Source: Octopus sinensis (lineage: Eukaryota). Taken from it: DNA of 64,000 nucleotides. The notes under the pieces were generated by a model. It saw nothing but the letters and a program-made list of their open reading frames with translations. It was not told the DNA's origin and ran no database searches. The position numbers were made by a program, and so were the translations under genes. Location: assembly GCF_006345805.1 (NCBI RefSeq), contig NC_043000.1:129332001-129396000 (forward strand). Reading direction: 5' to 3'. Below, one piece after another: positions 1,380 to 63,660 of the stretch. How positions within the stretch are numbered: the first letter of the stretch is position 1; the number at the start of each line of letters is the position of its first letter.

Positions 1380-1544
1380 GGCACAGGAGTGGCTGTGTGG
1401 TAAGTAGCTTGCTTACCAACCACATGGTTCCGGGTTCAGTCCCAATGTGTGGCACCTTGGGCAAGTGTCTTCTACTATAGCCTCGGGCCGACCAAAGCCT
1501 TGTGAGTGGATTTGGTAGACGGAAACTGAAAGAAGCCCATCGTA

Positions 1545-1577
<33 letters not shown>

Positions 1578-5214: not shown

Positions 5215-5950
5215 TCAATTATAAAACTCAATCTAATAATATACTATAAAATTATAATAGTGATAGGATGATGCTGATAATAATAAATTCTTCTGTAGAT
5301 TGACCACAATTGGTAGCTCATTGGTAGACCATGCCCTGTTGTATTTAGCAATGATTCATGTTTTGCATTCAAATCTCATGACTCTCTATCGATTATTAGC
5401 TTGAATTTATAATAAACCAGCTAAATTTAGATGACTTGCTCTGAGATACTTTGAGTTAACTGTGTGACCATCTCCAAATACAACAATATATATATATATT
5501 GTAAATAAGTACCACTGTTATACAAGTGGTGTTATTCATTTCCAATATTCTGTGAAAACATGTCTGCTCATGGGGAAATATTACTTTGATTGGAAACAGG
5601 TGAAAGTTGGTGACAGGAAGGGCATCTGGCTGTAGAAAGTTTGCCTTGATAAACTCCATCCAACCTATGCAAGCATGAAAAGTGGATGGGAACACATTTA
5701 TACTGTGTACATATGCACATATGATGGTCTGAGCACTGAGTTTAAAGCTTTCCCTGCTAAATGGAAATGATCAAGAGGAAAATGGTTTTTGAGCAGAATG
5801 AATTTCTCAGAAAAGACGGATTAAGAAAAAGAAACTGTTACTGCTGTTTGAAAGCTTCGAAGCAAAATAGTATTTTCTAAATTGTTAGTGAAATATTAAG
5901 AAACATGGAAAAAATAAAATATTGGAAATCAAAAATTTTAAAGTTTCATT

Positions 5951-7090
5951 TCAGTAAAAATCAAATTCTTTGAAAATTGGTCGATCTTCAATGGGAGTAT
6001 TCAGTTTAGAAAAACGACGGAAAAAGGGATGTCTTGGATGATGTGAGAAATGATCAAATGGTGGTCTGTCATATCTAGAATTCCATGTAAAATCTGCTTT
6101 GTCTTGGCTTTTTTCAAATCTTTGGTGAAAAGGGCCATGCTGGCCAAAATTTTCTGGTCTGCCAAAATGACGATGACTATCAAAATGCCATTCTTTGGGA
6201 GAATAGGAGGAATCATGTGTTTGTCTTGGCATCTGAAAGAAGCTGTTTTCAGATGGGTGACAGTTGTATTCATAATTTGGTCTTTGGAAATATCTCGGAT
6301 CTACAAAGTGATCTGGTCCACCATAATGACAAGGGATGTCAAAAGGACCTCTTCTATGAGATTGCCATGGAGCATTAAATTGCCATGGATTCATGAAGTG
6401 ATCTGGACCTCCATACATACATGGTCTATCAAAGTAATTTGGCATGTCCTCACAGTCAGGGCTAATAAAGTGATTTGGTCCACCATAAAAGCAGGGTACC
6501 TCAAAAGAATTGCCTCTACCAGGAAAACCATGATGACCTGGTCTATTGAAAGAAGGAGGAATATCTGAAAAGTGTGGTCTTCTAAACTGATCAAAATGCT
6601 CTGAATGGTTGGAGAAATTATGATTCCCAAAATGCCTCCCCATGTGGCAAGAAGAATCGGCATGACATTCTTCATGTTTGCTCTGATTTAGATTCTCAGT
6701 CTTGGAATCTTTACTTTCTTTGTCTTTTGAATTGTCCTTCTGATGGCATGAACAATTGGAATGATCTGAAAAAGTATTCCAGCCACTTCTAAAATAGTAA
6801 GGATGGCAACAATCATTTTGGTATCTACCAAAAAATCCAGGAAAATGGTGATTCTCTTCAGATATCTGTTTCTCTTTCATTGGATTGCAATTAGAAAATC
6901 TTCCATGTTTCCCAGAGTTACATGGTGTTTTCTTGGATGTATCTTTCTGTTGATTCTCTTTCTCAGTGTTCTTCCCTTCTGCTGCAGCAGGTATGTTTTC
7001 TTTATCAACATGTTCTTTGGCATCTGTTACCTTCAAATTTTGGTCTTTCTTGACTTCAGGAATTTCTTTCTTGCTGCTTTCTTCAGCCAT
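5951..7090 (-). CDS. unrecognised 379-aa low-complexity protein: charged N-terminus, His/Phe/Cys/Pro/Gly-rich C-terminal two-thirds, three 13-aa repeats
   Basis: Uninterrupted 1140-nt ORF with no microsatellite or TE motifs. ATG context acaATGG. Strong acceptor 23 nt upstream. Repeats differ mainly at synonymous and x positions. Confidence 0.8.
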   Translation of the reverse strand: MAEESSKKEIPEVKKDQNLKVTDAKEHVDKENIPAAAEGKNTEKENQQKDTSKKTPCNSGKHGRFSNCNPMKEKQISEENHHFPGFFGRYQNDCCHPYYFRSGWNTFSDHSNCSCHQKDNSKDKESKDSKTENLNQSKHEECHADSSCHMGRHFGNHNFSNHSEHFDQFRRPHFSDIPPSFNRPGHHGFPGRGNSFEVPCFYGGPNHFISPDCEDMPNYFDRPCMYGGPDHFMNPWQFNAPWQSHRRGPFDIPCHYGGPDHFVDPRYFQRPNYEYNCHPSENSFFQMPRQTHDSSYSPKEWHFDSHRHFGRPENFGQHGPFHQRFEKSQDKADFTWNSRYDRPPFDHFSHHPRHPFFRRFSKLNTPIEDRPIFKEFDFY

Positions 7091-7113
7091 TGTAAATTAT
7101 TTTGTATGTTGTT

Positions 7114-7140
7114 CTGTAAGATACAATAAGAAAGAAAAGT
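7114..7140 (-). promoter_or_regulatory. 3' splice site preceding the coding exon of the 379-aa gene
   Basis: Minus strand reads acttttctttcttattgtatcttacag|aacaacatacaaaataatttacaATG: a polypyrimidine tract plus CAG, with the exon starting at 7113. Confidence 0.7.
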
Positions 7141-7347
7141 AGAGAAAAGAAATATTATAAAACATATTAACCAAAAATGATATTTTAAATACTAACAAGG
7201 TATTTTTTCACATTGTGAATTTTGAATGTGAGCATATGCATGTATGTGCACGCATACTTATCTATGGTAGTTTTCTGTCACTACAGAAAACTCACCCACA
7301 CATAGTCACTCACAAATACTAGATCGTGCATATATTTGATGTATATA

Positions 7348-7790
7348 CAGGGTACAGTGAATAAACTGTCGTTCAAATTATGCAAAAATGAAAATAACAG
7401 ACATCCTATTTTAACAGATATGTTTACCAAAATTATATGAAAATATCTTGAAATACTAAAGAGTAAATTTATTCAACAAAATCGCCGTTGGCTTCAACCA
7501 CAGCCTCCGGATGACTTCAGAATCTTCTGCAACCCTTCTGGATGATCTCGTTTAAGTTGGTGAATGCTGCCATAATCCTTGCCATCAGTTCATCTTTGGT
7601 GTTACAAGGAGTTTTGTTGGTCTCTCACTCAACATAATAATCAAGGGGGTTGCAGTCTGGGGAGTTAGGTGGCCAGATGTTAGGAGTGATGTGGTCACAG
7701 GAATTGTTTGACTTCTGCTCAGCACTCCATTGGCACAACTCTTATGATCACTGTCACACACAAGCCACGATATTACAACAAGGACTGGAT
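7348..7790 (-). mobile_element. Tc1/mariner (maT/DD37D-like) transposase 3' remnant
   Basis: Minus strand translates to DHITPNIWPPNSPDCNPLDYY...TKDELMARIMAAF. TIR-like ta|cagggtacagtgaataaa at 7346. Confidence 0.75.
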
Positions 7791-9894
7791 CTTGTGATAA
7801 GCACAAATATTTTAATAATCTATATCAAGTGCAAACAATAGTCACAAAAGATACAGTGGGATCATTAGTTGATGGATAGCCAACAACTTTTAACGGCATA
7901 AATGTTGAGGTGTCATTAATAGTTGCAGCGTTAATGTAACAAAGTCTATAAATTACTAGTATGGTCCACTCAGAGTACTAAACAGTTTCTGTTAACTAGG
8001 TGACCTAATTATTACTGGAATATAACTATTTGTGAATATATCAAAGGTAGACTAACAAAGCAGAGGAGGAAATTTAGGGGCCTTTGTGGTTGTTAAGTCC
8101 CACATCTGCCCTGGGTAAAGAAACAAACCTATGATTAAAAACAGTCTGTTCATGACTTTACAATCTCTCTCTGAAGACATGGTATATCAAGGGCAACACC
8201 ATTCAATATGTCTATTTATTTTTTAAAGCTATTTGGGTGTGATATGAGAGAAATTTAATAGCTACTTGTGAATAAAATGTGTTGCTTAAAATACATTATT
8301 TTGTTTTTTTACATCTGGTTTTCTAAGCTTTGGCTCTAAAGTTGACAAACTACATTTTAATTCTGTGACACACTTTCCAGCAATATTTATTGATAAATAA
8401 TTGGTTGAGAATATATTTTATTGAAATTATGTACTGGTTATATAAAAAGAGCAAGAATTTACATTAGTAAAGAGCTGGGAAGGTAAGAAATATCTAATAT
8501 GCTGACAAAAGTATTTTACTATAGAATGAAAGGTGACAGGTTATTTTTGAGGCATTGACACCTGCCATAGTGGCCCTTGAGCCAATAAGAGAGAGTCCAG
8601 GCAGTCATTTCAACTGCTTGAAACAGAAGTCATCAAATGTTTCTTAAATCGCAAAAAAAAAAAAAAAAAAAAAAACATTTTTAAACAAAAGTATGTAGAC
8701 CTTAGTACACTAATACATATGATGTAGAACTAGATAACTATTCCTGAATGAAAAAAAAGATTAAAAAAAGGGAAATGTATTTTTACAAAGCAGTTGTTAT
8801 TATTGTTGTGATTTTAGCCTTCATAAGCAAACATGTGGTCAAGGCTTTTGAAAAGAGCCAGCAGTTATTTAGGTAAGCCATTTGCTTCCTATGGAGAAGA
8901 TGTCATGGATGACTTTTCTCCACTATTCTCGACTCTGGGCTGTCATTTCCTTTCACAAGTCTTGTTGGTTTTGAATTTTTATTGATGCTTCTGTAACTTT
9001 GCTTTTCTTTTCCTGAGTAGGGGTGTTGGCCCTACAGAAACCCATTTTACCTAGGAACAGGTGGTCCATATTGTTCAGGTCTGCATTATTTGACCTTTCC
9101 AGTATTGGGGCCCTATCAGGAGCTTGCATTCCACTGGCATGACTCTCAGCATCATTGAGGTACCCTAGCCTTTTCACTGCAACAATGAATGGACCTTGTG
9201 GTGGCAGTAGTTGTTTAGGGTTGACGTGTTTGCTGGACCTGAAAAGGTGAGCAAGTCTTTAGGATGTAGTTTTAGCTGCTATGAATATGCAATTATTGGG
9301 AGAGACTTCTGGTGATTCACTGTGCTTGAGAAGACACTTCAAGCTAAGTAAAATTGTGGCCATCCATACATACAAACATGTCCCTCTGTGAGCCATGAGG
9401 CCCTTGCCTTGTGAGTTTGGAGGAGCTAGTTCCACGTAAAAAGTACTTGTTTTGGTAATCATGTAAAAAACATCATCATCACCATTTAACATCTGTTTTC
9501 CATACTGGCATGGGTTGGATGGGTTTTTTTCAGAGCTGGAAAGTCAGAGAGCTGTTGTTTGTTTTGGTGTGGTTTCTATGGATGGATGCCCTTCTTAATA
9601 CCAACAACATTACAAAGTGTACTGGGTGCTTTTTTTTCTACATGGCACCAAATAACTTGCAAGACAAGATCCCTCAATTGAGGGTGTGTGTACTACTGAG
9701 GGAGGTGGCCTTGTGCCAAATAATGAGAGGTTAATGTATAATAGGACAGAAACATGTGTCTTGCTGTAGAGGAGTTATAGGGCTACCCCAGTTGGAAAAC
9801 AGAGAGACGGTGGTGAAAGGGTGACAGGGCATACTAATGTAAGTTGAAGTAGTACAGAAGATTGGGCAAGGCAAATGGAGAGGTAAGTTGTATA

Positions 9895-11807: not shown

Positions 11808-12676
11808 CTTTTTTTTTTCAGTCATAGAGTTAGATTTATGAAGGTCTTCAGTAGAAAATCCTTCGAATTCTGACTCGCTGCTTGATATAATGAAATTCGT
11901 ATCCATTTTTTGTCAGAATTACAAATTTTGAAAACACAATACAAACAAATTTCAGAAAAAAATCTCCCATAATTCACGGAATTAAAATTACACTTCGATT
12001 TTTGTACAAAACTGTATTTGAAGTGTTTACGAAGTATAATACGTGTTTTCACGAATGTACTAAAGAGATTTACTCTGATATTCTCATTTAAATATGAATA
12101 GATAAATTCGGGCGGTTTGGTAACGAAAGGGTTAAACGGATGCATACATTTATTAATAACTATATATAAGTGTCGTCTGTTTATACATAAACACTGTTTC
12201 ATACTTTCAGTTTAGTCTTCCTCAAATCACTCTGTCGCTATTTACTCTCTTCCAAGAACATTTTCACTCACTCTTATCTCTTAGCTTGCCATACATTTTA
12301 CTCATGTATCTATCAGCGTGATAGACAGAAACAAATATTACATCGCCATCGCCATCGCATTCTATTGTCTACCTGTCAACAAACACACAGTGAATTAGTT
12401 TCACTTTATTCGTTGCACACTGTGTGTGTGCGTTTGCGTGTGCTGTAAACCAGACTAAGAAAAGCATTTGACATACACACCAGAATGTGAGTTTTCTGTA
12501 AATTTTGCTTAATTGGAGTTTAAATTTTAAAAACTGGACCTGGCATAACCCGATGCATTCTACTCTTAAAAATGCTAGGTAAATTGTAATTGAAGAAATC
12601 CTATATTGTAGATTTCTATAAGTGACAAAGGGAGGCAGATAAAATCTGCCTTTTATAATAAGAGATGTACGTAGGT

Positions 12677-12971
12677 ATCATCATCATCATTATTATTTAA
12701 TGTCCGTTTTCCGTTCTAGCATGGGTTGGACAGTTCGACCAGGGTCTGGGAAGCCAGGAGGCTGCACCAGGCTCCAGTCTGATCTGGCAGTGTTTCTACA
12801 GCTGGATGCCCTTCTTAACGCCAACCACTCTGTGAGTGTAGTGGGTGCTTTTTACGTGCCACCGGCACAGGGGCCAGGGGAGGCTGCCAGTGGCCATGAT
12901 TGGTTAGTGCTTTTTACGTGCCACCAGCACAGAAGCCAGTCAAGGTGGCGCTGGCATCAGCCGCGTTCGGA
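12677..12971 (-). mobile_element. 5'-truncated copy of the RTE LINE 3' UTR (family B)
   Basis: Matches 30581-30890 closely, including the (GAT)n tail and the repeated gcttttacgtgccacc motif. Confidence 0.85.
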
Positions 12972-14777
12972 TGTATGTATGTGTGTGTGTATACATGTTT
13001 ATTTAAATAGTTATATATCTACATATACGTACCTACATACATACAAATATATAACATATATACGTACATGCATACATTAAAGTTTCAGGGATGTCTCTCA
13101 CACCCTGTCACAAAAATATGTAAATAAGCAGATTGTCATTCTCCCAATGTCAAAATTATGTCTATCAATCCCTCCATTTATAGCTGTAATTAACATAATG
13201 AATTGTTTTTAAATTTGAAATAATGAGAGTTAATTATACATACAGATTAACTGGCTGAACTGACCAGTTTAACAAGAGTAGGAGGAGCTGAGTAGACAAA
13301 AATAAACAACATTTATAATATAAAATACTAAAACAAAAATATCACTAAGGACATCTATTAAGTTGCTTTTCTCTACAAATTACTGAAATGAAAAGCTGTT
13401 ATGCAACTTTTTTATGTTGTCAAAGACAAAAACTAGAACAAGTTGTGTAACTTCATGACAACAATCATCACAACCATCAATATCGACCACCACCACCACC
13501 ACCACCACCACCACTACCACCACCACCACCACTACCACCACCACCACTAAGACAGCCTTTGTGTGATTGATTCACGTACAGGTTATGGTAGTTGTCAAAC
13601 AGCTTTCATATTATGTTCTACGATTTAAAAAAACGGAAGGTCACATAGGGCAGTGTAGTCCTAAGTATTATAAATGACCCGCTAGCAGTAACAACAGCAA
13701 TAATCTAACTGCCATAATTTCACTGTTGCTTGCAATAGATTAATAAAGTTTATCCTAAAACACACAGACATATCAAGTGTTTGGCTGTTTGGTCTGGACC
13801 AGATCTTTGAGGTAGTTTGGATTTGCTGTATAAACCTGTATAGGCTCAGGTGCCCAGGGCAGTTGGGGTAGTAAACACACAGGCTACACTGGGTGGCACA
13901 CAACCAGGCTATGCCACTGAGTTGATACTGCAAATTTGTATATTACTCATGTTATTTATAACTACCTGCCCATTGTGCTTTATTTTGGTTTACATCTGAT
14001 TACAATGGAATGACTGCTCAAGTGTTTCCTGTGAGAGAAATGCATTACACTCATAAGAGATCCATCTGTTGCCAACACCCTCAGTATGTCCCAACTGATG
14101 ATGCACAGGCAAACACTGAAGCTGTAGGATCTGCAGAGATTCATGAATGGTGAGCAAGTGTGACAGATATTTGCAAACCACATCTTCCTCCAGCTCAAGT
14201 CTTTGACAGAGCTACAGTACTGGGTTGCACAAAGGCCAAAATCGGGGACCTGGAATCTGGAATGTTGTTAGGTGCTCATAGTTCACAAGTTGGGTAATGT
14301 GAGTGGGAAGTACATCAACCCTTACATTCGATGGAAGGTTAGTAGTAGGCAAGAGCTATGGCATTCTTTGGAAGACTGGGGCACCTATGACAAAAAAAAA
14401 GACAAAACGGCAGAGCTTATTCTAGGAGGACTTCAGTATAGGAACTATAGATAAGTTCCTGAAATCTCTGACTTGTTAATGCCACAGAGGGTGGGCATTG
14501 CTGATTTGAGATAAACTAGTCCTGTTTGAGATGTATGCAGAGCAATGAAAATATTCTGCACACATGTTTAGTGTGTTAGTTATGTCCAAACAGCTGTTGT
14601 GCTGTGTATGAAGAATCCAACTATTAGCCAAATACGTCATGAGAGTTTCCATGTCAGTTATCTTCTCTAGTGAAGGTGACATGTGTGCACAGTACACTCT
14701 ACAGAGTGGCTGGAAAACGAATGGAGAATACATAGAAGAGAGAGGAAACTCTAGTTTGTTTTGTTTATGACAACCTT

Positions 14778-15222: not shown

Positions 15223-15809
15223 TTTATTTGTGACAACCTTGTCAGTGGTGATACCACAATGAAATGCACTCAATAAAACTTTTTAGAATGGCTGTTGTTA
15301 GGAAAGGAACCCAGCCATAGAAACCATGCCAAATCACAAGTAAAACTGAAGTTTTCTGACCTTTCTAGTTCAGCAGTTGTTCTGAATATGAAATGCAATT
15401 CATGACAGCATGGAAAGCAAATACAAAATACTGCTGATGTATACATGTGTGCATACACACACACACACACACACACACACATGCATGCAGATATATGCAG
15501 ACAAACATATGTACATACATATATATGTACATACATACTCATATGCACATATACATGCATACAAACATCCATATATACATAGATAAGTCTTGTGATTATC
15601 TGTCTAGTCAAAGGAACATGGCTGGGTCAATTAGATTATAAAAGTCAAAGTGTTGGCATTGAGTGTCAGGAAGTTTTATCAAAAACACTGAGTCTAACAA
15701 AACACATTTTGTTTTGTCTCAAAAGTGTTTTCATACAAAACAAAGCTTCCTGTGATGGATTCATTGTTTTCATCATTTTAAACACATACACATACAGACA
15801 AACACTCAC

Positions 15810-15814
<5 letters not shown>

Positions 15815-15854
<40 letters not shown>

Positions 15855-15954
15855 CTCTCTCTCTCTCTCTCTCTCACACATACACATACACCCATGCACA
15901 CACACACGCACAGACACATATATACACATAAACACATATATAAATAAATATATC

Positions 15955-15992
<38 letters not shown>

Positions 15993-16034
15993 ATTATATA
16001 TATATATGTATGTATATATATATATATATAATAT

Positions 16035-16068
<34 letters not shown>

Positions 16069-16075
16069 ATATACA

Positions 16076-16127
<52 letters not shown>

Positions 16128-16150
16128 ATATATATGTATATACACACATA
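15815..16150. repeat. compound (CA)n/(CT)n/(TA)n microsatellite block
   Basis: Directly visible. Source of spurious YIYI/HTHT ORFs. Confidence 0.95.
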
Positions 16151-16182
16151 AACATAAGCATACATGTGTGTGTAAGCATATA

Positions 16183-17444
16183 CAGGGGTTGGACAAAATA
16201 ATGGAAACACCTAGTATCATAGCATCATAATTTTGAAAGATCTATAATACTGTCAAAAGCATGTTTATTTTTATGTTTTTTGATTTATTATTAGTGTTGC
16301 TTAATATGTTTTGCTAAATTTGCTGCTTCTTTTCAGATATCAGAAAAAGGTAATTAAAATTCATTAAAATGACAGATCTATTGGACTTTCAAAGAAGTAA
16401 GATTGTTGGTGTTCATATGGCAGGCACTAGCGTAACAAAAGCAACTGAAATGTTTGGTGTATCAAGAAGTACTGTCTCAAAAGTAATGACAGCCTTTGAG
16501 AAAGAGGGAAAAACCTCCTCGTCAAAACAAAACTCTGGAAGAAAACCAAAACTTTCAGACTCTTCCGGACCCTTACATGAATTGTTAGAAAGGATCACAA
16601 AAGAACAGCTCCCACAATTACTGCAGAGCTTAATGACTACCTCGAGAACCCAGTTTCCACAAAAAACTGTTCGCTGGAGGCTGTACAAAGCTGGATTTCA
16701 CAGGAGGGCTGCAATCAGAAAACCACTACTTTCAAAATCAAACACTACAAAGCATTTAGAGTGGAGTAAAAACCTACAGAGTGGAGAAAAAATCTAGAGT
16801 AGTGGAAGAATGTTATTTTTTCGGATAAGTCATCCTTTACCTTATTTCCAACCACCGGCTGTGGAGACAGCCAAAAGAAGCATTTGACCCAGACTGCCTT
16901 CTTCCAACTGTTAAACATGGAGGAGGATCTATGATGATCTGGGGAGCTATATCTTGGAAATCCACTGGCCCAATGGTTTTTCTTCATGGCAGAATTAATA
17001 GTTAAGACTATTTAAGCATTTCATCAGATCAAATTGATCCTATGCTTGCAGAACTGTTTCTGGAGGGAAACGCAATTTTTCAGGATGATAATGCACCAAT
17101 TCACAGAGCTAAAGTTGTTACTGAATGGCACAAGGAACATTCTAGTGAAGTTGAACATCTTATCTGTCTACCACAGTCATCAGATTTCAATATTATTGAA
17201 CATTTATGATGCAATTTAGAAAAACAAGTAAGGAGTTGATATCCTCCACAATCATCACAACAAGAACTGGAGACTATTTTAGCTGAAGAATGAACAAAAA
17301 TTCCTTTGGAAACAATTCAAAGTTTGTACGAGTCCATACCTCATAGAATTCAAGCTGTAATTACTGCCAAAGGTGATCCTATTCCATATTAAAATAAATT
17401 TGTTTGAAATTTTAAGGTGTTTCCATTATTTTGTCTAACGCTTG
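16183..17444 (+). mobile_element. full-length but inactivated Tc1-like transposon with DD36E spacing
   Basis: ~30-bp TIRs cagggGttggacaaaataatggaaacacct / aggtgtttccattattttgtctaacgcttg. HTH N-terminus in ORF 16369-16797, then FSDK, QDDNAP and NIIE motifs. Frameshifts and stops present. Confidence 0.9.
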
Positions 17445-23645: not shown

Positions 23646-23970
23646 CGTGGCACCTTGGGCAAGTATCTTCTACTATAGCCTCGGGCCGACCAATGCTTTG
23701 TGAGTGGATTTGGTAGACGGAAACTGAAAGAAGCCCGTCGTATATATGTATATATATATATATATGTGTGTGTGTGTTTGTGTGTCTGTGTTTGTCCCCC
23801 TAGCATTGCTTGACAACCGATGCTGGCGTGTTTATGTCCCCGTCACTTAGCGGTTCGGCAAAAAGAGACCAGTAGAATAAGTACTGGGCTTACAAAGAAT
23901 AAGTCCTAAGGCGGTGCTCCAGCATGGCCGCAGTCAAATGACTGAAACAAGTAAAAGAGTAAAAAGACTA
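23646..23970 (+). mobile_element. family A SINE, 5'-truncated
   Basis: Matches 1450-1800. Confidence 0.85.
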
Positions 23971-24577: not shown

Positions 24578-25296
24578 TAGTGACAACTACAAAGTCTTCG
24601 GCAGTAATAACTTCTGCAACAATAATGGTTACGCTTGTGGATGTGTGGTAAGAAACTTGCTTCCCGACTACATGGTTCCAGGTTCAGTCCCACTGTGTGG
24701 AACCTTGGGCAAGTGACTTCTATTATAGTTTTGGGCTGACCATAGCCTTCTGAGTGGATTTGGTAGATGGAAACTGAAAGAAGCCCATCGTGTATATCCA
24801 GCTGTAAAAATCCTGCCAAATTAGTCACAGAAGTCTGGTGCAGGCGGCTTCAGCCTAGTCGTCTCTTGTGGTACCATCTCACTCATGCTAGTACGGAACA
24901 TGGACATGATGATGATGATGATGATGATGATGATATATATATATATATAAAAAATAAATAAATAAATTAATTAATTAATAAACAAAATAATATATAAATA
25001 TAAAAATATACATACATATATATATATATATATTTGTATATATATATTTAAAATTTATAAGTTTAAATTATTTTAATAATTTTTTTTTAACTTTTATATT
25101 TTTAAATTCATTTTATGTATTTGCTTATGTTTTTCACTGTTTGATTTGCCTAATAGTGGTTTTATCTGTAATTTAATATAATATAATATAATATATTTAT
25201 ACTATAAAATTGGATTTAATCCTAAATCTAATTTTTCCCTGTAAGTTTGGATTTATCCCTGATATTATTATTATTATATATATATATATATATGTA

Positions 25297-26726: not shown

Positions 26727-27889
26727 ATATGTGTGTTTGTGTGAATGTTTGTGTTTGTCCCACCACCACCACCACCACCACCACCACTCTCTTTTAAAAT
26801 ATGAGTAATGTAGCTCCTCTGAAGCAAGAGACCCATTCTGTTCTGGCACTTTCTTGCATACTTTTGTGGTCTTTTGCCCATCATCTGTTAGTATAACATT
26901 GCACTGTTGGGGTTTGCAGTCTTGCAAACTGTATGATGGCCACATCAGTGCAGAAAAAAGAAAAAGCACCTTGTACACACCGTAAAGTGGTTGGTTTTAG
27001 GTAGGTGGTGGGTGGGGTGGGCATTTAACCATAGGAACTGTGCCGAAGCATAAACTGGAGCATGCCAGAGTCCTTTGACCTATCAAATCCTGTCAGAGTC
27101 CAACACATGCAAATATGTAACAGGGATGTTAAATAATGATGGTGAGGAGAACGGGGATGATGATGATGATGATGACAACGACGTTGATGATGATGATAGT
27201 GATGATGATGATGATGAGAACGATGATGGTAATAACAATGATCACACACACACACACACACACATACAAATGTATGCATGGATTTTAACTCTGAGATTGG
27301 GTGGTGAATTGTCTCCTTCAACAAAACATTTAATTTCATTTTCTTCTTGTAAAAATCAGCTGAGAATGAGCACTTTTGGCGTTTTGGAGTTAACCCTGTG
27401 ACACACCAGCGTCCAGTTCAGTGGTCAGCTTATAGTCTCAACCTAAATGCTTTGAAAATTTAAATCAAGCTCTGGCTTCATGCACCTGTAGTTTTGAGGT
27501 AGCTTTTTTTCATATCTATACCTGCATCGTCATCATCATCATCACCATCCCCACCACCACCGCCACCACCACCACCACCAGTGGCACGTAAAAGCACTCA
27601 CTACACTCTCGGAGTGGTTGGCGTTAGGAAGGGCATCCAGCCGTAGAAACTCTGCTAGATCAGATTGGAGCCTGGTGCAGCCATCTGGTTCGCCAGTCCT
27701 CAGTCAAATCGTTAAATGGGGTGATAGTGCTAAGCAGTGAGGTGTATAATTAGACTGATAACAAGTTAGTAGTTTCGCTTTTGGATTTGGTTTGCAAGAT
27801 TCTTTATGTGAATTCGTGTGTTGAAGCATATTCTGTTGTGTCGGGGGAGAGTCATTTTCTTTTTGTCTTATCAGTAAAACTTCCATTTA

Positions 27890-30512: not shown

Positions 30513-31093
30513 AAAAATAAATGTCCAACCACACTCCTTCTTGTTGACTCCAATTTTTTAAAATTTGTATATATGTAAGGATCATCATCATCATCATCAT
30601 CATCATTCAATGTCCGTTCTCCATGCTAGCATGGGTTGGACGGTTCGACCGGGGATCTGGGAAGCCAGAAGGCTGCACCAGGCTCCAGTCTAATCTGGCA
30701 ATGTTTCTACAGCTGGATGCCCTTCCTAACGCCAACCACTCCGTGAGTGTAGTGGGTGCTTTTTACGTGCCACCTGCACAGGTGCCAGGCGAGGCTAGCA
30801 ACGGCCACGGTCGGATTGGTGTATTTTATGTGCCACCGGCACGGAAGCCAGTCGAGGCGGCGTTGGCATCGGCCACGAGTCGGATGGTGCTTTTTACGTA
30901 CCACCAGACCAGGGATCCTGGCTGGTTCAATTCGGTTTCGATTTCGATTTCACTTGCCCCAACATGTCTTCGCAAGCAGGGGGGAGGGGGTTGGCATGGG
31001 TGCCTGTCGTCGGATGAGGTTCTATATCGACTTCGCTTGCCTCAACAGGTTTTTGTGTCCAAGGGAGGAAAGGCATTCATAAGTGGGCTGGGC

Positions 31094-31730
31094 TCACTTG
31101 TCCTGCCTGGTCTTCTCATGTACAGAATATTTCCAAAGGTCTCGGTCGCTGGTCATTTCCTCAGTGAGGCCTAAAGTTCGAAGGTCGTGCTTCACCACCT
31201 CGTCCCAGGTTTTCCTGGGTCTACCTCTTCCATAGGTTCCCTCAACTGCTAGGGATTGGCACTTTCTCACACACCTATCTTCATCCATTCTCGCCACATG
31301 ACCATACCAGCGCAATCGTCTCTCTTGCACACCACAACTGATGCTTCTTAGGTACAACATTTCTCTCAAGGTGCTAACGCTCTGTCGAGTATGTACACTG
31401 ACATTACACATCCATCGGAGCATACTGGCTTCATTCCTCACGAGCTTACGCATGTCCTCAGCAGTCACGGCCCATGTTTCACTGCCATGTAGCATGGCTG
31501 TTTGTACACACGCATCATACAGTCTGCCTTTTACTCTGAGCGAGAGGCCTTTAGTCACCAGCAGAGGTAAGAGCTCCCTAAACTTTGCCCAGGCTATTCT
31601 TATTCTAGCAGTTACACTTTCAGCGCACCCACCCCCACTACTGACTTGGTCACCTAGATAACGGAAGCTATCAACTACTTCTAGTTTTTCCCCCTGGAAA
31701 GTGACGGAAGTTGTTTTCTGCAGATTTTCT
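31094..31730 (-). pseudogene. RTE LINE ORF C-terminal part in a second frame
   Basis: EVVDSFRYLG...RIRIAWAKFREL...LHGSETW...RLRWYGH...GRGRPRKTW is the standard RTE C-terminus. It overlaps the end of the upstream ORF. Confidence 0.85.
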
Positions 31731-34190
31731 GCCACATACAAAAACTATCTTCCCAGTTAGCCTACCTTTGACATTGCTGCACCTCATATGTGTCCATAGC
31801 TTACACTGGGTACATCTTATAGAGTTTCTACCTACACCTTTTCTACAGATCGAGCAGGGCCATCTTCCTGAAGACATTTGTGGATTGTCTACCTTCCTAC
31901 TTATTAGTTCTTTGGTTTTAGCTAGGTTGACTCTAAGGCCCCTCGATTCTAAACCCTCCTTCCACACCTGGAACTTCTCCTCCAGTTCTGATAGTGACTC
32001 AGCAATAAGAGCAAGGTCGTCAGCGTAGAGGAGCTCCCAGGGACAACCTGTCTTGAATTCCTCTGTAATTGCCTGGAGTACTATGATAAATAGGAGGGGG
32101 CTGAGTACTGAACACTGGTGGACCCCAACCTCTACTTTGAATTCTTCTGTGTACATGTTGCCAACCCTAACCTTACTTACGGCATCTCTGTACATGGCTT
32201 GCACAGTCCTCACCAGCCATTCATCTATCCCTAGTTTCCTCATTGACCACCAGATAAGGGATCGGGGGACCCTATCAAAAGCTTTCTCCATGTCAACGAA
32301 AGCCAGGTACAGGGGCTTATCTTTGGCTAGGTATTTCTCCTGCAGCTGCCTTACCAGGAATATAGCATCAGTGGTACTTTTCCCTGGCACGAACCCAAAC
32401 TGCATCTCATCTAAACTAACTCTCTCTCTAATTAGTTGGGCTATGACCCTCTCCGTAACCTTCATTACTTGATCCAGCTTGATACCTCTGTAATTATTTG
32501 TATCTAGGGCATCACCTTTACCTTTGTAGCAGTTGACTAGTATGCTGCTGCACCAGTCATTGGGTATGACTCCTTCATGTATCACCTGGTTGACTATACG
32601 GGTGACTAGGTTATAGCTGACACTGCCAGATATTTTGAGCATCTCTGCAGTAATTCCTGATGGGCCTGGGGCTTTCCCTGTCTTCATGCTTCTAATTGCC
32701 TTAGCTACCACGGCACAATCAACTCGGATAGCTGGTCCCTCTGTTGGGTCAACATTCGGCAGACTCTCTTTATCCCATTCATTTTCTTTATTCAGCAACC
32801 TTTCATAGTGGCATCTCCAAACCTCTCTCTTTGCATCCTCATTTAGCGCAAGTGAACCATCATCCATGCGAACACACTTCTCTCCTACCACATCACGATT
32901 CTCTCTCACACACTGTCTTGCAACACGAAATACCTCAAGTCTTTCATCCTCACGGCTCAGAACATTGGCAAATTTTTTCTTATCCGCTTCCCCTCTGGCT
33001 AAATAAACCTGTCTCCTAGCTTCCCTTCTGGCTGTCTGATACAATTCCCTGCTACCACCGTTCTTCCAGTCCTTCCAAGCCTGTCTCTTTTGTCTAATAG
33101 CCCTGTCAACCACAGTGTTCCACCACCATGTTACTCTGGGTCGAGATGGTACTTTGCTCCATCCACAGATCTGGTCAGTGGCTGTCAGCAGATTGTCCCG
33201 TAGAAATCTCCAGTTGCTTTCCACATTAAGTGAAGCTATATCCACTTCTATTTCGTCAAAGGCTTCGAGTAGTATGTCTCTAAATCTCTGTCCATTTGCA
33301 GGATCTTTAAGCTTCCAGACCCTTCTCCTCCAAGCAGGTCCTCTTCTGGGCAACCATTTAGCTCTGATCCTGAAGTCACTAACTACTAATCTATGTTGAG
33401 GAGTACATTCTTCGCCTGGAAAGGTTTTGGCATTTATAAGCAGCCCTCTTTCCCTTTTTCTGGCAAGGATGTAGTCAATCTGGCTAGTGTGTCTGCCAGA
33501 ACGGTAGGTGACTAGGTGAGAGGTGGGTTTCCTGAAGTTGGTATTGCAGACCATAAGGTCATTTGCATCACAGAACTCCAGCAGCCTGGTTCCCTCCTCA
33601 TTACGAGAGCCAAAACCGTAGCCTCCATGAACGCCATGGAAGCCCCCGACATGCCGTCCAACATGTCCATTGAAATCACCTGCCACGAAGAGAAGGTCAC
33701 TGTCATTTGTCAACGAGGTAGTCCGCAATAGGGTGTCATAGAATTGGTCTTTTTGACCTTCCGGTAGCCCTGGTTGAGGGGCATATGCCGAGATGATAGT
33801 AGCTGACCTATGGTGAAGCACTAATCTAATCTTAAGTACTCTATCACTTACTCTGACTACCTCGATTACCTTATCTACCCATTTCTCTGCAAGAAGTATA
33901 CCCACGCCCCCGACCCCGTCAGTGTTCCCTACCCAGAAAATCTTGTACCTGTGTTCCTTGCCTGTGAGTAGCCTAGCGGAGCCTCCTCTCCACCTTACTT
34001 CCTGGATGCAGCATAAATCCACACGCCTCCGTTCAAGCAGCTCAACAATCTCTCCAGACCTACCTTTCAATGTGCCAACATTGAGTGTGCCAACTCTGAG
34101 GGTGTGGGAGGTGTGGGCCTCTGAGACCCTGGGATGAGGGACAGCAATGTCATGTACCTGAAAAGAAAGCTTGCATTTGCCAGATTTCAT
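31671..34190 (-). CDS. RTE LINE endonuclease-reverse transcriptase ORF, 5' part (839 aa, ends out of frame)
   Basis: ORF track. Contains APE, RT and a Cys-rich WPCSICRKGVGRNSIRCTQCKLWTHMRC finger. Frame break near 31730. Confidence 0.85.
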   Translation of the reverse strand: MKSGKCKLSFQVHDIAVPHPRVSEAHTSHTLRVGTLNVGTLKGRSGEIVELLERRRVDLCCIQEVRWRGGSARLLTGKEHRYKIFWVGNTDGVGGVGILLAEKWVDKVIEVVRVSDRVLKIRLVLHHRSATIISAYAPQPGLPEGQKDQFYDTLLRTTSLTNDSDLLFVAGDFNGHVGRHVGGFHGVHGGYGFGSRNEEGTRLLEFCDANDLMVCNTNFRKPTSHLVTYRSGRHTSQIDYILARKRERGLLINAKTFPGEECTPQHRLVVSDFRIRAKWLPRRGPAWRRRVWKLKDPANGQRFRDILLEAFDEIEVDIASLNVESNWRFLRDNLLTATDQICGWSKVPSRPRVTWWWNTVVDRAIRQKRQAWKDWKNGGSRELYQTARREARRQVYLARGEADKKKFANVLSREDERLEVFRVARQCVRENRDVVGEKCVRMDDGSLALNEDAKREVWRCHYERLLNKENEWDKESLPNVDPTEGPAIRVDCAVVAKAIRSMKTGKAPGPSGITAEMLKISGSVSYNLVTRIVNQVIHEGVIPNDWCSSILVNCYKGKGDALDTNNYRGIKLDQVMKVTERVIAQLIRERVSLDEMQFGFVPGKSTTDAIFLVRQLQEKYLAKDKPLYLAFVDMEKAFDRVPRSLIWWSMRKLGIDEWLVRTVQAMYRDAVSKVRVGNMYTEEFKVEVGVHQCSVLSPLLFIIVLQAITEEFKTGCPWELLYADDLALIAESLSELEEKFQVWKEGLESRGLRVNLAKTKELISRKVDNPQMSSGRWPCSICRKGVGRNSIRCTQCKLWTHMRCSNVKGRLTGKIVFVCGRKSAENNFRHFPGGKTRSS

Positions 34191-35609: not shown

Positions 35610-36399
35610 GTATATATATACGACAGGCTTCTTTCTGTCTCTGTCTACCAAATCCACTCACAGGGTTTTGGTCAGCCCAAGGCTATGGTAGAAAGCACTT
35701 GTGCAAGGTATAATGCAGTGGGACTGAACCCAGAATTATCATCATCCTTTAAAATGGATGTTAAAGGATGATAATGATGGTGTGTGTGTGTGTCTATATA
35801 GACATATATACATCATTTGTACATATGCACACACATGCACACAAATATATATACACACAGAGGAAATAGCTGGGATTTACTCTAACTACTTATTGAAAGC
35901 TTAGCCAGAACATCAAAACATCAAAAGCAAGCTAGAAATAATTCTGTGCTGTAGACAAATATAATATTGCTCATGTAATAATATATTTTTTCTTATTATT
36001 TTGGCAAATAAGAAAGTAGCAAGCTGGCAGAATCATTAGCAGCTGGGCAAAATGCATCACAGCATTTTGTCTGTTTTTTACATTTTGAGTTCAAATTTTG
36101 CCGAGGTTAAATTTGCCCTTCAGCCTTTTGGGGACAATAAAATAAGTACCAGTTGAACACTGAAGTCGATGTAATTGACTCATCCCCTCCCCTGAAATTG
36201 CTGCTGTTGTGGAAAAATTTTGGCAAATAAGGCAGATATTTTTGGGCATATTTTGGTATTATTATGAGTTCAGGAGTGAAGCATAAAATTCAGTTTTTAA
36301 AAAAATTCCTAAATAAATCTAAAACAATGTACACTAGCTAGTTGTCATAGAAAAAATAAACTAGAATTGTTTTATACACATGCACACACGTATGTATGC

Positions 36400-43400: not shown

Positions 43401-43824
43401 TCTGCTATTTAGTGTATTGATCTCATAAAATATGAAATGCAAACTACACATTAACTTATTTTTTTCAAATAGACTTGCTTTTGTCTGCTCCATACTGATA
43501 CAAGTATATATATATATATATATCATCATCATCATCATCGTTTAACGTCCGTTTTCCGCGCTAGCACGGGTTGGACGGTTCGACCGGGGTCTGGGAAGCC
43601 ATATATATATATAATAGAAATATTAAAATTACTAAGTCTCTCTAAAGGAGATTACGGCAGTGTTACTGGAAATTAATAGTTATTGCCATACTTATCTGGC
43701 AGTCTTATAAATATGGACGCAGGTTGTGTGTCAAATAGCTAGCTTGAGGCGGTGGCCTCTTGGAGCTAATCAGCGACAGCTTTAGTCTTATATTATAAGA
43801 CTGCCATATAAGTATGGCGATAAC

Positions 43825-52798: not shown

Positions 52799-53210
52799 AG
52801 GCGTAGGAATGGTTGTGTGGTAAGTAGCTTGCTTACCAACCACATGATTCCGGGTTCAGTCCCACTGCGTGGCACTTTGGGCAAGTGTCTCCTACTATAG
52901 CCTCAGACCGATTAAAGCCTTGTGAGTGGATTTGGTAGACGGAAACTAAAAGAAGCCCGTCGTATATATGTATATATATATATGTGTGTGTGTATATATG
53001 TTTGTGTGTCTGTGTTTGTCCCCCCAACATCGCTTGACAACCGATGCTGGTGTGTTACGTCCCCGTAACTTAGCGGTTCAGCAAAATAGACCGATAGAAT
53101 AAGTACTAGGCTTACAAAGAATAAGTCCTGGGGTCGATTTGCTCGACTAAAGTCGGTGCTCCAGCATGGCCACAGTCAAATGACTGAAACAAAAAAAAAA
53201 GTAAAAGAGA
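52799..53210 (+). mobile_element. family A SINE
   Basis: Full-length copy. Confidence 0.85.
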
Positions 53211-63519: not shown

Positions 63520-63660
63520 AAGTAGCTTGCTTACGAACCACATGATTCCGGGTTCAGTCCCACTGCGTGGCACCTTGGGCAAGTGTCTTCTACTATAGCC
63601 TCGGGCCGACCAAAGCCTTGCGAATGGATTTGGTAGACGGAAACTGAAAGAAGCCCGTCG

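What the first reader, a model, noticed from the sequence alone, without database searches (positions are those of the whole stretch)
5951..7090. Orphan 379-aa His/Phe/Cys-rich low-complexity protein
Seen: a clean 1140-nt ORF with a proper acceptor and no TE motifs. By manual count it has about 33 His, 38 Phe, 13 Cys and only 3 Leu. The N-terminus is Lys/Glu-rich with no signal peptide or hydrophobic segment. Established: coleoid cephalopods have lineage-specific disordered, aromatic-rich proteins (reflectins, suckerins, His-rich beak proteins). This sequence matches none of their motifs as I know them. Inference: a cytoplasmic or nuclear disordered protein capable of pH- or metal-dependent self-assembly, possibly a novel cephalopod material or condensate protein.
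Basis: partly seen in the sequence, partly recalled or inferred. Interest (0 to 1): 0.7.

Follow-up and report, generated by a model that had tools for sequence, protein, structure and literature searches.

The report
Octopod-only disordered Phe/His-rich protein gene
This is a real, evolutionarily maintained gene, found so far only in octopuses and the argonaut, that encodes an unstructured intracellular protein rich in phenylalanine, histidine and proline whose net charge should flip near neutral pH; its function has never been tested.

Summary
Window 5951-7090 (minus strand) is a 379-codon ORF with exactly 33 His, 38 Phe, 13 Cys and 3 Leu, and no hydrophobic segment. A splice acceptor and an in-frame TAA upstream of the ATG are conserved in Argonauta.

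It is a genuine coding gene. Orthologues exist in O. vulgaris (99%), O. bimaculoides (84%), another Octopus species (80%) and Argonauta hians (42%). All 12-13 indels are in frame. dN/dS is 0.13-0.64 depending on method.

Nothing else matched in 1.84 billion representative proteins, Pfam or PDB. A profile-profile test against real reflectins was negative, and the motifs of reflectins, beak proteins and suckerins are absent.

AlphaFold (mean pLDDT 32.5) and the charge-hydropathy rule predict disorder.

Selection appears to act on composition. His, Phe, Cys and Leu counts and pI (7.06-7.33) are nearly constant across 42% identity. Phe and Pro positions are preferentially invariant; Cys positions are not.

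Conserved parts are three tandem PxxYGGP(D/N)H(F/Y) repeats, an N-terminal EHVDKENIP block and a C-terminal FSKLxxPIEDRPIFKEFDF motif.

The most likely role is a multivalent aromatic/His scaffold with a pH- or metal-sensitive charge switch. That is inferred, not shown. No expression data could be obtained. Interest is moderate.

The parts
5951..7090 (-). Complete coding sequence (379 codons plus TAA), a single coding exon
   Evidence: The exact protein is on record in NCBI. Orthologous single-exon CDS in Argonauta at L002 10001-11080 and in O. vulgaris at L003 10001-11140.
7091..7113 (-). 5'UTR part of the coding exon, with an in-frame TAA at 7097-7099 and a Kozak-like ACAATGG
   Evidence: The TAA at -9 and the ACAATGG context are conserved in Octopus sp. 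and Argonauta.
7114..7140 (-). Splice acceptor (CAG) and polypyrimidine tract at the end of a 5'UTR intron
   Evidence: The T-rich tract plus CAG is conserved in Argonauta although the sequence further upstream does not align. Splicing itself was not observed.
6911..7090 (-). aa 1-60: Lys/Glu-rich N-terminal region with no aromatic residues
6989..7015 (-). aa 26-34, EHVDKENIP. Eight of the nine residues are invariant in all five orthologues (D29 is N in one). Contains a D-KEN-x-P sequence that resembles an APC/C KEN degron.
   Evidence: A KEN arises by chance in 14% of shuffles of this region, so the degron reading is only a lead.
6641..6910 (-). aa 61-150: first aromatic/Cys/His patch, followed by a Lys/Asp/Ser/Asn-rich linker
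6737..6757 (-). aa 112-118, NCxCHQK: the only Cys cluster conserved from Octopus to Argonauta
   Evidence: invariant N112, C113, C115, H116, K118.
5954..6640 (-). aa 151-379: Phe/His/Pro/Arg/Gly-rich domain with 46 aromatic residues, 23 His and 29 Pro; HF occurs 9 times here and F-x-R-P 5 times
6257..6496 (-). aa 199-278: three tandem repeats of 24, 30 and 26 aa, each starting P-C-x-Y-G-G-P-(D/N)-H-F (6425-6496, 6335-6424, 6257-6334)
   Evidence: hhalign between the repeat sub-alignments gives probability 96-97% and E 1e-9 to 1e-11. The repeats are present in Argonauta without the Cys.
5954..6013 (-). aa 360-379, FSKLNTPIEDRPIFKEFDF(Y/C): the longest conserved block (17 of 20 residues invariant across the five orthologues) and the only stretch with pLDDT above 50
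   Evidence: The last residue is Cys in the four other orthologues and Tyr in the window.

Best explanation
**Shown**
- This is a functional protein-coding gene restricted, as far as can be detected, to incirrate octopods (Octopus species and Argonauta).
- It has a non-coding 5' exon or exons and one coding exon.
- It encodes a 379-aa intracellular protein with no signal peptide or membrane segment.

**Predicted**
- The protein is intrinsically disordered along essentially its whole length.

**Inferred mechanism**
- It acts through bulk sequence chemistry plus short linear motifs, not through a fold.
- The C-terminal two thirds is a multivalent array of aromatic (mainly Phe), Pro, His and Arg 'stickers'. 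It includes three PxxYGGP(D/N)H(F/Y) repeats.
- These stickers would mediate weak self-association, or association with a partner, as a condensate or scaffold.
- About 32 His hold the protein at zero net charge near pH 7.2. A small acidification, or binding of Zn/Cu-type ions to His, would swing it to strongly cationic and so switch association on or off.
- The conserved EHVDKENIP block and the C-terminal PIEDRPIFKEFDF motif are probably docking or turnover motifs that link this body to cellular partners.

**My probabilities**
- Real constrained coding gene: about 0.95.
- Disordered intracellular protein: about 0.8.
- pH- or metal-tunable multivalent assembly as the working principle: about 0.35. 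The confidence field gives this last figure.
For: **Coding and constrained**
- The ORF is intact in five sequences from four or more species, down to 42% identity.
- All 3 Octopus-Octopus indel events and all 12-13 Octopus-Argonauta indel events are whole codons.
- dN is below dS by every method: omega 0.38-0.57 for the close pair and 0.13-0.64 for the distant pairs. Fisher p is 2e-6 to 7e-13.
- The flanks are unalignable with Argonauta apart from interspersed repeats.

**Intracellular**
- The in-frame stop upstream of the ATG is conserved.
- There is no hydrophobic stretch.

**Disordered**
- AlphaFold gives mean pLDDT 32.5 and pTM 0.12, with no secondary structure beyond three 4-residue helical turns.
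- Mean hydropathy is 0.342 against a charge-hydropathy boundary of 0.417.
- Leu+Ile+Val make up 4.2%.

**Selection on chemistry**
- Across 42% identity, counts stay at His 31-34, Phe 37-41, Cys 13-14 and Leu 3-5, and pI at 7.06-7.33.
- Phe and Pro positions are invariant at 47 of 73, against 134 of 379 overall (odds ratio 4.55, p 2e-8). Ser/Thr/Asn/Gln 'spacer' positions are depleted among invariant sites.

**Charge switch**
- Computed charge is -2 at pH 7.4, +12 at pH 6.5 and +27 at pH 5.5, and is similar in all orthologues.

**Precedent**
- His deprotonation drives coacervation of squid beak proteins, and reflectins assemble through aromatic, Arg and His chemistry (PMC11931252).
Against: - No experiment or expression datum supports assembly, and no tissue is known.
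- Aromatic residues are not significantly more evenly spaced than in shuffles (z about -1.5).
- His positions are conserved only at the average rate (14 of 33).
- With only five related sequences in the alignment, a low pLDDT is weak evidence for disorder.
- dN/dS is fairly high. In the close pair the nearby non-coding flanks (d 0.07-0.16) diverge about as little as non-synonymous sites (0.09). The case for constraint therefore rests mainly on the Argonauta comparison and the in-frame indels.
- Composition-level conservation fits a metal buffer equally well.
Confidence: 0.35

Rival explanations
1. It is a cytosolic metal (Zn/Cu/Ni) buffering or storage protein. The roughly 32 His and 13 Cys act as a diffuse, low-affinity ligand pool, so the number of ligands matters and their positions do not.
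For: - His is 8.7% and Cys 3.4%.
- Their counts are almost constant across orthologues (His 31-34, Cys 13-14), while Cys positions turn over (3 of 13 invariant).
- A conserved NCxCH cluster exists.
- From general knowledge: cephalopods handle large copper fluxes for haemocyanin.
Against: - The residues under the strongest positional constraint are Phe and Pro, not His or Cys. A simple ligand pool does not explain this.
- There are no CxxC motifs and no long His runs.
- No metal-binding family matched.
Confidence: 0.15
2. It is a regulated adaptor or cell-cycle/germline factor whose function lies in its two conserved short linear motifs. The N-terminal D-KEN-x-P would be an APC/C degron or pseudosubstrate, and the C-terminal PIEDRPIFKEFDF a docking peptide. 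The Phe/His-rich body would be mostly a spacer.
For: - EHVDKENIP (eight of nine residues) and the last 20 residues are the most conserved blocks in an otherwise fast-evolving protein.
- The C-terminus is the only part with pLDDT above 50.
- KEN followed by Pro in a disordered, acidic/basic context resembles known APC/C substrates such as securin (general knowledge).
- Fast evolution and a single coding exon are common in germline genes (general knowledge).
Against: - KEN occurs by chance in 14% of shuffles of this K/E/N-rich region.
- There is no D-box (RxxL).
- A pure spacer would not keep its composition, its pI and 63-66% of its Phe and Pro positions across 42% identity.
Confidence: 0.12
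3. It is not truly octopod-specific. It is the rapidly diverged orthologue of an older coleoid or molluscan gene whose similarity has decayed below detection.
For: - Identity already falls to 42% between Octopus and Argonauta, with 12-13 indels.
- Extrapolated to the older octopod-decapodiform split, similarity would be hard to detect.
- Which cephalopod proteomes the libraries hold is not known.
Against: - A full-HMM search of 1.84 billion representatives found only the octopod sequences.
- Those libraries do hold decapodiform proteins, since reflectins of Sepia, Doryteuthis, Loligo and Acanthosepion were retrieved.
- This concerns origin, not mechanism, and is compatible with the best explanation.
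Confidence: 0.3
4. It is a secreted structural material protein (beak, sucker lining, radula or egg case), an octopod counterpart of the squid His-rich beak proteins or suckerins.
For: - The composition is rich in His, aromatic residues, Gly and Pro, with YGGP repeats.
- His-rich beak proteins and suckerins were reported as not found in O. bimaculoides (PMC9068888), which leaves that role open.
Against: - There is no signal peptide or hydrophobic N-terminus.
- The conserved in-frame stop between acceptor and ATG excludes an upstream signal-peptide exon.
- Gly+Ala+His is 16.6%, against more than 50% in beak proteins.
- There are no GHGxx, GFA or GGY/GGL modules.
Confidence: 0.03
5. It is a highly divergent reflectin.
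For: - Shared traits: single coding exon, no signal peptide, depletion of Leu/Ile/Val, richness in polarizable residues.
- Rough computed refractive increment is 0.200 overall and 0.205 for the C-terminal domain, against 0.206-0.218 for reflectins and 0.193-0.196 for two controls. The per-residue values were recalled from memory.
- It is on the same Argonauta chromosome as a reflectin.
Against: - hhalign of the family profile against ten real reflectins gives probability 0.11% and E 0.5.
- It has 0 reflectin repeat motifs and no MEPM N-terminal motif, against 2-7 motifs in reflectins.
- Met is 1.8% against 9-16%, Tyr 3% against 11-20%, and Lys 7% against 0-3.5%.
- The Argonauta reflectin lies 53 Mb away.
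Confidence: 0.02
6. It is a non-functional chance ORF or annotation artefact.
For: - No transcript evidence could be obtained. The three Logan contigs are unspliced, genomic-looking sequence.
- All four differences from O. vulgaris are non-synonymous.
- Flank divergence in the close pair is similar to dN.
Against: - The chance expectation for an ORF this long is about 1e-6.
- The frame is kept open through more than 50% amino-acid divergence and 12-13 in-frame indels.
- dN is below dS with p down to 7e-13.
- Start context, upstream stop and acceptor are conserved.
- The extreme composition is maintained against mutational expectation.
Confidence: 0.03

Closest known systems
Reflectins (cephalopod iridophore and leucophore proteins)
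   Same: - Lineage-restricted.
- Single coding exon.
- No signal peptide.
- Disordered.
- Poor in Leu/Ile/Val.
- Rich in aromatic, His and Arg residues.
- Assembly controlled by charge neutralisation.
- Relatively high predicted refractive increment.
   Different: - No sequence or profile homology.
- No MDx5MD repeat motifs and no MEPMSRMTMDF N-terminal motif.
- Phe/Pro/His-rich rather than Met/Tyr/Arg-rich.
- Has a 150-aa Lys/Glu/Asp-rich N-terminal part.
- pI is about 7.2 rather than strongly cationic.
- One copy per genome as far as seen, not a gene cluster.
Squid histidine-rich beak proteins (HBP-1/2/3)
   Same: - His-rich disordered proteins.
- Deprotonation of His near neutral pH changes net charge and lets aromatic contacts drive coacervation (PMC11931252).
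- This is the same physical principle as proposed here.
   Different: - HBPs are more than 50% Gly+Ala+His, are built of GHGxY and GAGFA pentapeptides, have pI about 6, and are extracellular beak matrix proteins known only from decapodiforms.
- This protein has none of those motifs, 16.6% Gly+Ala+His and no secretion signal.
Suckerins (sucker ring teeth proteins)
   Same: - Cephalopod-restricted.
- Contain His and Gly/Tyr.
- Modular repeats.
   Different: - Suckerins alternate Ala/His-rich beta-sheet modules with GGY/GGL-rich modules and form secreted materials.
- There are no such modules here, and no beta structure is predicted.
Aromatic 'sticker-and-spacer' low-complexity domains of condensate proteins such as FUS and hnRNPA1 (general knowledge)
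   Same: - Disordered.
- About 15% aromatic residues, with Arg partners.
- Aromatic positions are conserved while spacers drift.
- Few aliphatic residues.
   Different: - Phe dominates rather than Tyr.
- Very Pro- and His-rich, and charged rather than Gly/Ser/Gln/Asn-dominated.
- No RNA-binding domain attached.
- Even spacing of aromatics is not demonstrated.
APC/C KEN-box substrates and pseudosubstrates such as securin (general knowledge)
   Same: A conserved D-K-E-N-x-P near the N-terminus of a disordered protein.
   Different: - No D-box.
- No homology.
- The motif could be a chance occurrence (14% in shuffles).
- Nothing is known about cell-cycle behaviour.

Membership tests
Reflectin | Repeating motifs MDx5(MDx5)nMDx3-4 (PMC11931252) | tested here: not met
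   Regex [MF]D.{5}MD.{5}MD finds 0 in all five orthologues and 2-7 in ten real reflectins. The MD dipeptide occurs 0-1 times against 9-18.
Reflectin | Conserved N-terminal motif MEPMSRMTMDF(Q/H)GR...VDP | tested here: not met
   There is no MEPM core. The N-terminus is MAEESSKKEIPEV.
Reflectin | Detectable sequence or profile homology to reflectins | tested here: not met
   hhalign of A1 against A3 gives probability 0.11% and E 0.5. No reflectin appears among the hits.
Reflectin | Composition: high Met, Tyr and Arg; Leu/Ile/Val below about 2-3%; little Lys | tested here: not met
   Met 1.8% against 9-16%, Tyr 3.4% against 11-20%, Lys 6.9% against 0-3.5%. Only the Leu/Ile/Val depletion (4.2%) is similar.
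Reflectin | Single coding exon, no signal peptide | tested here: met
   Argonauta gene L002 10001-11080 and Argonauta reflectin L006 10001-11344 are both uninterrupted. There is no hydrophobic N-terminus. This feature is shared but is not diagnostic.
Histidine-rich beak proteins | Gly+Ala+His above 50%; GHGXaXb pentapeptide repeats with or without GAGFA/GFA (PMC11931252) | tested here: not met
   Gly+Ala+His is 16.0-20.9%, with 0 GHGxx and 0 GFA/GAGFA.
Histidine-rich beak proteins | Secreted into the beak matrix, which implies an N-terminal signal peptide (general knowledge) | tested here: not met
   There is no hydrophobic segment anywhere (maximum 19-residue KD -0.005). The conserved in-frame TAA upstream of the ATG excludes an added exon.
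Suckerin | [quoted passage not shown] | tested here: not met
   0 GG[YL], Ala 2.1%, and no predicted beta structure.
Sticker-and-spacer condensate-forming IDR (functional class, not a homology family) | Intrinsic disorder | tested here: met
   Mean pLDDT is 32.5. Charge-hydropathy gives 0.342, below the 0.417 boundary. This is prediction only.
Sticker-and-spacer condensate-forming IDR (functional class, not a homology family) | Aromatic stickers conserved while spacers vary | tested here: met
   Phe is invariant at 24 of 38 (p 3e-4). Phe+Pro are invariant at 47 of 73 against 35% overall (p 2e-8). Ser/Thr/Asn/Gln positions are depleted among invariant sites (p 1e-3).
Sticker-and-spacer condensate-forming IDR (functional class, not a homology family) | Aromatic residues more evenly spaced than random | tested here: inconclusive
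   Patterning z is about -1.5 in three orthologues, which is not significant.
Sticker-and-spacer condensate-forming IDR (functional class, not a homology family) | Phase separation or self-assembly of the protein | not testable with these tools
   Needs recombinant protein.
APC/C KEN-box substrate | Conserved KEN in a disordered region | tested here: inconclusive
   The KEN at aa 30-32 is invariant and sits in an EHVDKENIP block with eight of nine residues invariant. A KEN arises in 14% of shuffles of the N-terminal 60 aa. A second KEN at aa 44 is not conserved.
APC/C KEN-box substrate | Cdh1/Cdc20-dependent ubiquitination and degradation | not testable with these tools
   Needs a biochemical assay.

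The most novel reading that the evidence does not exclude
Octopods carry a second family of charge-switchable, high-refractive-index, aromatic/His-rich intracellular assembly proteins. It would have arisen independently of reflectins (Phe/Pro/His chemistry in place of Met/Tyr/Arg) and would build a tunable condensate or optical or structural body in a specialised octopod cell type.
Probability: 0.1. Interest if true: 0.75.

Novelty: new variant of a known kind. Interest (0 to 1): 0.4.

Why it matters
- **A second, unrelated family:** cephalopod-restricted disordered proteins (reflectins, suckerins, His-rich beak proteins) have taught much about pH-switched protein assembly and have seeded biomaterials work. 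A family with a different chemistry (Phe/Pro/His, pI about 7.2, intracellular) would allow a comparative test of which sequence features really encode such switches. It would also be a candidate for an octopod-specific cell-biological innovation.
- **Selection on composition:** residue counts and pI are held almost constant while 58% of positions change. This makes it a clean example of selection acting on composition rather than on sequence.
- **Caveats:** octopus genomes contain many uncharacterised lineage-restricted genes, and nothing here ties this one to a tissue or phenotype. Its present value is as a well-defined, testable candidate.

Tried and rejected
- **Family and structure searches:** Pfam on the window protein and on all five orthologues and PDB sequence and profile searches gave nothing. 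The best PDB E-values, 0.28 and 0.95, are noise.
- **Word-indexed search of 5.8 billion proteins:** only octopod orthologues.
- **Full-HMM search of 1.84 billion representatives:** only octopod orthologues.
- **Reflectin hypothesis:** short similarities I recalled (VDPRY, HFDS, NPF/W) prompted a real test. I fetched ten reflectins, aligned them and ran hhalign. The result was negative, and Pfam has no reflectin model.
- **Transcript evidence:** the Logan contigs L001, L004 and L005 contain the intron side of the acceptor and end in repeats, so they look genomic and say nothing about expression. The run accessions were not found in the literature.
- **Literature:** searches for LOC115210916, A0A0L8I6E0, A0AA36F232, CAI9720860 and for the peptide strings returned no paper.
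- **Synteny route to a decapodiform orthologue:**
  - XAP5/FAM50 lies 5 kb downstream in Argonauta.
  - It is not within the window, nor within 10 kb in O. vulgaris.
  - The XAP5 search returned only unnamed short contigs and non-cephalopods, so this was a dead end.
- **Paralogues in the window:** none.
- **Conserved non-coding elements or a 5' exon, compared with Argonauta:** only interspersed repeats align.
- **Aromatic-spacing test:** not significant.
- **Further internal repeats beyond the three YGGP units:** not significant.
- **Fold search:** not run, because a model with pLDDT 32 gives meaningless matches.
- **Rfam, tRNA and tandem-repeat scans:** empty.
Full report
**1. What is in the sequence**

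The finding is an ORF on the minus strand of the window. The ATG is at 7090-7088 and the TAA at 5953-5951, giving 379 codons.

There are also 35 Pro.

- **Chance:** with the window's base composition (38% G+C) the per-codon stop probability is 0.065. An open frame this long is expected about 1e-6 times in 64 kb.
- **Composition bias:** it is not a consequence of base content. Relative to the CDS's own base frequencies, Leu is at 0.08x, Ile and Val at 0.25x, Thr at 0.32x, and Phe and His at about 2.5x.
- **Not low-complexity in the strict sense:** the protein has 4.05 bits of entropy and no tandem DNA repeat.
- **No hydrophobic segment:** the highest 19-residue Kyte-Doolittle mean is -0.005 and the overall mean is -1.42.

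**2. Gene structure**

- Twenty-three bases upstream of the ATG there is a polypyrimidine tract followed by CAG.
- Between that acceptor and the ATG lies an in-frame TAA (window 7097-7099).
- The start context is ACAATGG.
- All of this is conserved in another Octopus species and in Argonauta hians, although the sequence further upstream no longer aligns.

The gene therefore has non-coding 5' exon(s) and one coding exon. No signal-peptide exon can be added in frame.

The Argonauta and O. vulgaris gene models are also single uninterrupted CDSs.

I could not locate the 5' exon or promoter. Against Argonauta only interspersed repeats align.

The first AATAAA downstream of the stop is 737 nt away, at about window 5214.

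**3. Relatives**

A search of 5.8 billion proteins found only four clusters:

| Source | Identity to window protein | Length |
|---|---|---|
| O. vulgaris | 99% | 379 aa |
| O. bimaculoides | 84% | 373 aa |
| Unnamed Octopus species (Logan assemblies) | 80% | 376 aa |
| Argonauta hians | 42% | 359 aa |

- The window's own protein is on record in NCBI.
- The window is 96-99% identical in DNA to O. vulgaris chromosome OX597817.1 around 37.7 Mb. It therefore comes from the O. vulgaris species complex.
- A profile of the five sequences, run without any word filter against 1.84 billion representative proteins, recovered only the octopod sequences.
- Pfam and PDB gave nothing, by sequence or by profile.
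- There is no paralogue in the window.

**4. Is it under selection?**

- **Frame conservation:** between Octopus and Argonauta the protein has diverged by more than half of its residues and acquired 12-13 indels, all of whole codons. The three indels between the two Octopus lineages are also in frame.
- **dN/dS, close pair:** 0.38 (NG86), 0.54 (LWL85), 0.57 (YN00) and 0.43 (ML).
- **dN/dS, Argonauta comparisons:** 0.13-0.64, with dS saturated.
- **Significance:** the excess of synonymous over non-synonymous change gives Fisher p from 2e-6 to 7e-13.

Caveats:
- In the close pair the adjacent non-coding flanks diverge little (d 0.07, 0.10 and 0.16). This is comparable with dN (0.09). These flanks may be UTR or intron ends under their own constraint, or dS may be inflated.
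- The four differences between the window and O. vulgaris are all non-synonymous, including the last residue, Cys to Tyr.

Constraint is therefore real but relaxed, as is usual for disordered proteins. The strongest evidence is the preserved frame and start/stop architecture across the Argonauta distance.

**5. What selection preserves**

Composition is almost frozen despite 42% identity:

| Property | Range across the five orthologues |
|---|---|
| His | 31-34 |
| Phe | 37-41 |
| Cys | 13-14 |
| Leu | 3-5 |
| Pro | 32-38 |
| pI | 7.06-7.33 |

Positional conservation is uneven:
- Phe is invariant at 24 of 38 positions and Pro at 23 of 35. Together that is 47 of 73, against 134 of 379 overall (odds ratio 4.55, p 2e-8).
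- His is average, at 14 of 33.
- Cys is poor, at 3 of 13.
- Ser/Thr/Asn/Gln positions are depleted among invariant sites.

The Cys at the start of each PCxYGGP repeat is absent in Argonauta. Computed net charge is about -2 at pH 7.4, +12 at pH 6.5 and +27 at pH 5.5 in every orthologue.

**6. Architecture**

- **aa 1-60:** Lys/Glu-rich and free of aromatics. It contains an EHVDKENIP block with eight of nine residues invariant.
- **aa 61-150:** an aromatic/Cys/His patch, then a Lys/Asp/Ser/Asn linker. It contains the only conserved Cys cluster, NCxCHQK.
- **aa 151-379:** the Phe/His/Pro/Arg/Gly-rich body, with 9 HF dipeptides and 5 F-x-R-P motifs.
- **aa 199-278:** three tandem repeats of 24-30 aa beginning P-C-x-Y-G-G-P-(D/N)-H-F. 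They are related at hhalign probability 96-97% (E 1e-9 to 1e-11). Further repeats were not significant.
- **aa 360-379:** FSKLNTPIEDRPIFKEFDF(C/Y), the longest conserved block (17 of 20 residues invariant across the five orthologues) and the only stretch with pLDDT above 50.

**7. Structure**

- AlphaFold2 on the five-sequence alignment gives mean pLDDT 32.5 and pTM 0.12, with no secondary structure beyond three 4-residue helical turns.
- The charge-hydropathy rule places the protein in the natively unfolded region (0.342 against a boundary of 0.417).
- With such a shallow alignment, low pLDDT alone is weak evidence. Combined with 4.2% Leu+Ile+Val and 9% Pro, disorder is the reasonable reading.
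- I did not run a fold search on this model because the matches would be meaningless.

**8. Comparison with known cephalopod families**

I fetched real reflectins (Sepia, Doryteuthis, Loligo, Acanthosepion, O. bimaculoides, Argonauta) and aligned them.

*Reflectins*
- Profile-profile comparison with this family is negative (probability 0.11%).
- The defining reflectin motifs, as given in PMC11931252, are absent. There are 0 repeat motifs against 2-7 in reflectins, and no MEPM N-terminal motif.
- Met is 1.8% against 9-16%.
- Shared with reflectins: a single coding exon, no signal peptide, depletion of aliphatic residues and richness in polarizable residues.
- A rough refractive-increment estimate, using per-residue values I recalled from memory, gives 0.200 overall and 0.205 for the C-terminal domain. 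Reflectins give 0.206-0.218 and two control proteins 0.193-0.196.
- The Argonauta reflectin lies on the same chromosome but 53 Mb away.

*His-rich beak proteins and suckerins*
- Their criteria also fail: Gly+Ala+His above 50%, GHGxY and GAGFA repeats, GGY/GGL modules.
- Those families were reported as not found in O. bimaculoides (PMC9068888). However, this protein has no secretion signal, so it is unlikely to be their extracellular replacement.

**9. Most likely mechanism and its rivals**

*Shown:* a constrained, octopod-restricted coding gene for an intracellular protein.

*Predicted:* disorder.

*Inferred:* the protein works through multivalent weak contacts of conserved Phe, Pro, Arg and His 'stickers'. 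About 32 His poise it at zero net charge near cytosolic pH. Mild acidification or His-metal coordination would then switch its self-association or partner binding. The two terminal conserved motifs would serve as docking or turnover signals. I put this at about 0.35.

Rivals:
- A diffuse metal buffer (0.15). Ligand counts are conserved, but Phe and Pro, not His and Cys, are the positionally constrained residues.
- A motif-driven regulator with a KEN degron (0.12). KEN arises by chance in 14% of shuffles and there is no D-box.
- A secreted material (0.03).
- A divergent reflectin (0.02).
- A non-functional ORF (0.03).

Independently of mechanism, the gene may be an older gene that has diverged beyond detection rather than an octopod invention (0.3).

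**10. What could not be done**

- **Expression:** there is no transcript evidence. The Logan contigs carrying the 80%-identical orthologue include the intron side of the acceptor and stop in repeats, so they look genomic.
- **Literature:** no paper mentions the gene, its accessions or its peptides.
- **Synteny:** the route through the Argonauta neighbour XAP5/FAM50 failed.

**11. Verdict**

The self-assembly and material role are untested.

It is an undescribed family within a familiar kind, the compositionally biased taxon-restricted disordered proteins. Interest is moderate (0.4). It would rise sharply if expression tied the gene to a specialised octopod cell type or if the protein shows switchable assembly.

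Noticed in passing
window 1430-1545, 23647-23741, 24677-24790, 35618-35747, 41459-41580, 42581-42731, 44117-44239, 45013-45117, 52844-52965, 54479-54597, 63542-63663: There are at least 11 copies of a short interspersed repeat, on both strands. The same element occurs in the Argonauta locus (L002 about 13325-13446 and 5719-5768) at up to 98% identity over its 46-nt core. It produces spurious ORFs such as '...[25 protein letters not shown]'. No tRNA or Rfam match.
   Followed up: partly
window 9471-9524, 12676-12826, 27602-27664, 30581-30743, 41221-41379, 42353-42525, 43521-43588, 48575-48727: A second interspersed repeat family of about 150 nt, also shared with the Argonauta locus at 70-89% identity.
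   Followed up: no
window 31094-34190 (-): A non-LTR retrotransposon ORF of 839 aa with an endonuclease (Exo_endo_phos), a reverse transcriptase (RVT_1) and a PHD-like zinc finger. A 215-aa ORF (31094-31741) follows it and looks like its shifted C-terminal continuation.
   Followed up: partly
window 16369-16797 (+): A fragment of a Tc1/mariner-type transposase N-terminus (HTH_Tnp_Tc3_2 and Sleeping Beauty-like HTH), next to a long TA/CA-type microsatellite tract at 15270-16230.
   Followed up: partly
window 7155-7736: A 582-bp segment in the presumed 5'UTR intron just upstream of the acceptor. It is absent from the orthologous contigs of another Octopus species (L001, L004, L005) but present in O. 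vulgaris. There is no other copy in the window, so it is an insertion or deletion of unknown nature.
   Followed up: partly
L002 11386-11442 (Argonauta, 3' flank of the orthologue): A duplicate of about 55 nt covering the gene's last codons plus the stop region (78% identity to window 5929-5980). It lies about 335 nt downstream of the real stop and is not part of an ORF.
   Followed up: partly
window 5954-5956, 6425-6427, 6434-6436, 6581-6583 (codons 379, 222, 219, 170): The window's CDS differs from O. vulgaris at four codons, all non-synonymous (Y/C at the last residue, P/S, E/D, H/N), with no synonymous change. The surrounding non-coding DNA differs by about 1.8%. The numbers are too small to test for positive selection.
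   Followed up: partly
L002 16261-20899 (-) (Argonauta): An XAP5/FAM50 gene lies tail-to-tail 5 kb downstream of the Argonauta orthologue. It is not within the 5.9 kb available downstream in the window, nor within 10 kb in O. vulgaris.
   Followed up: partly
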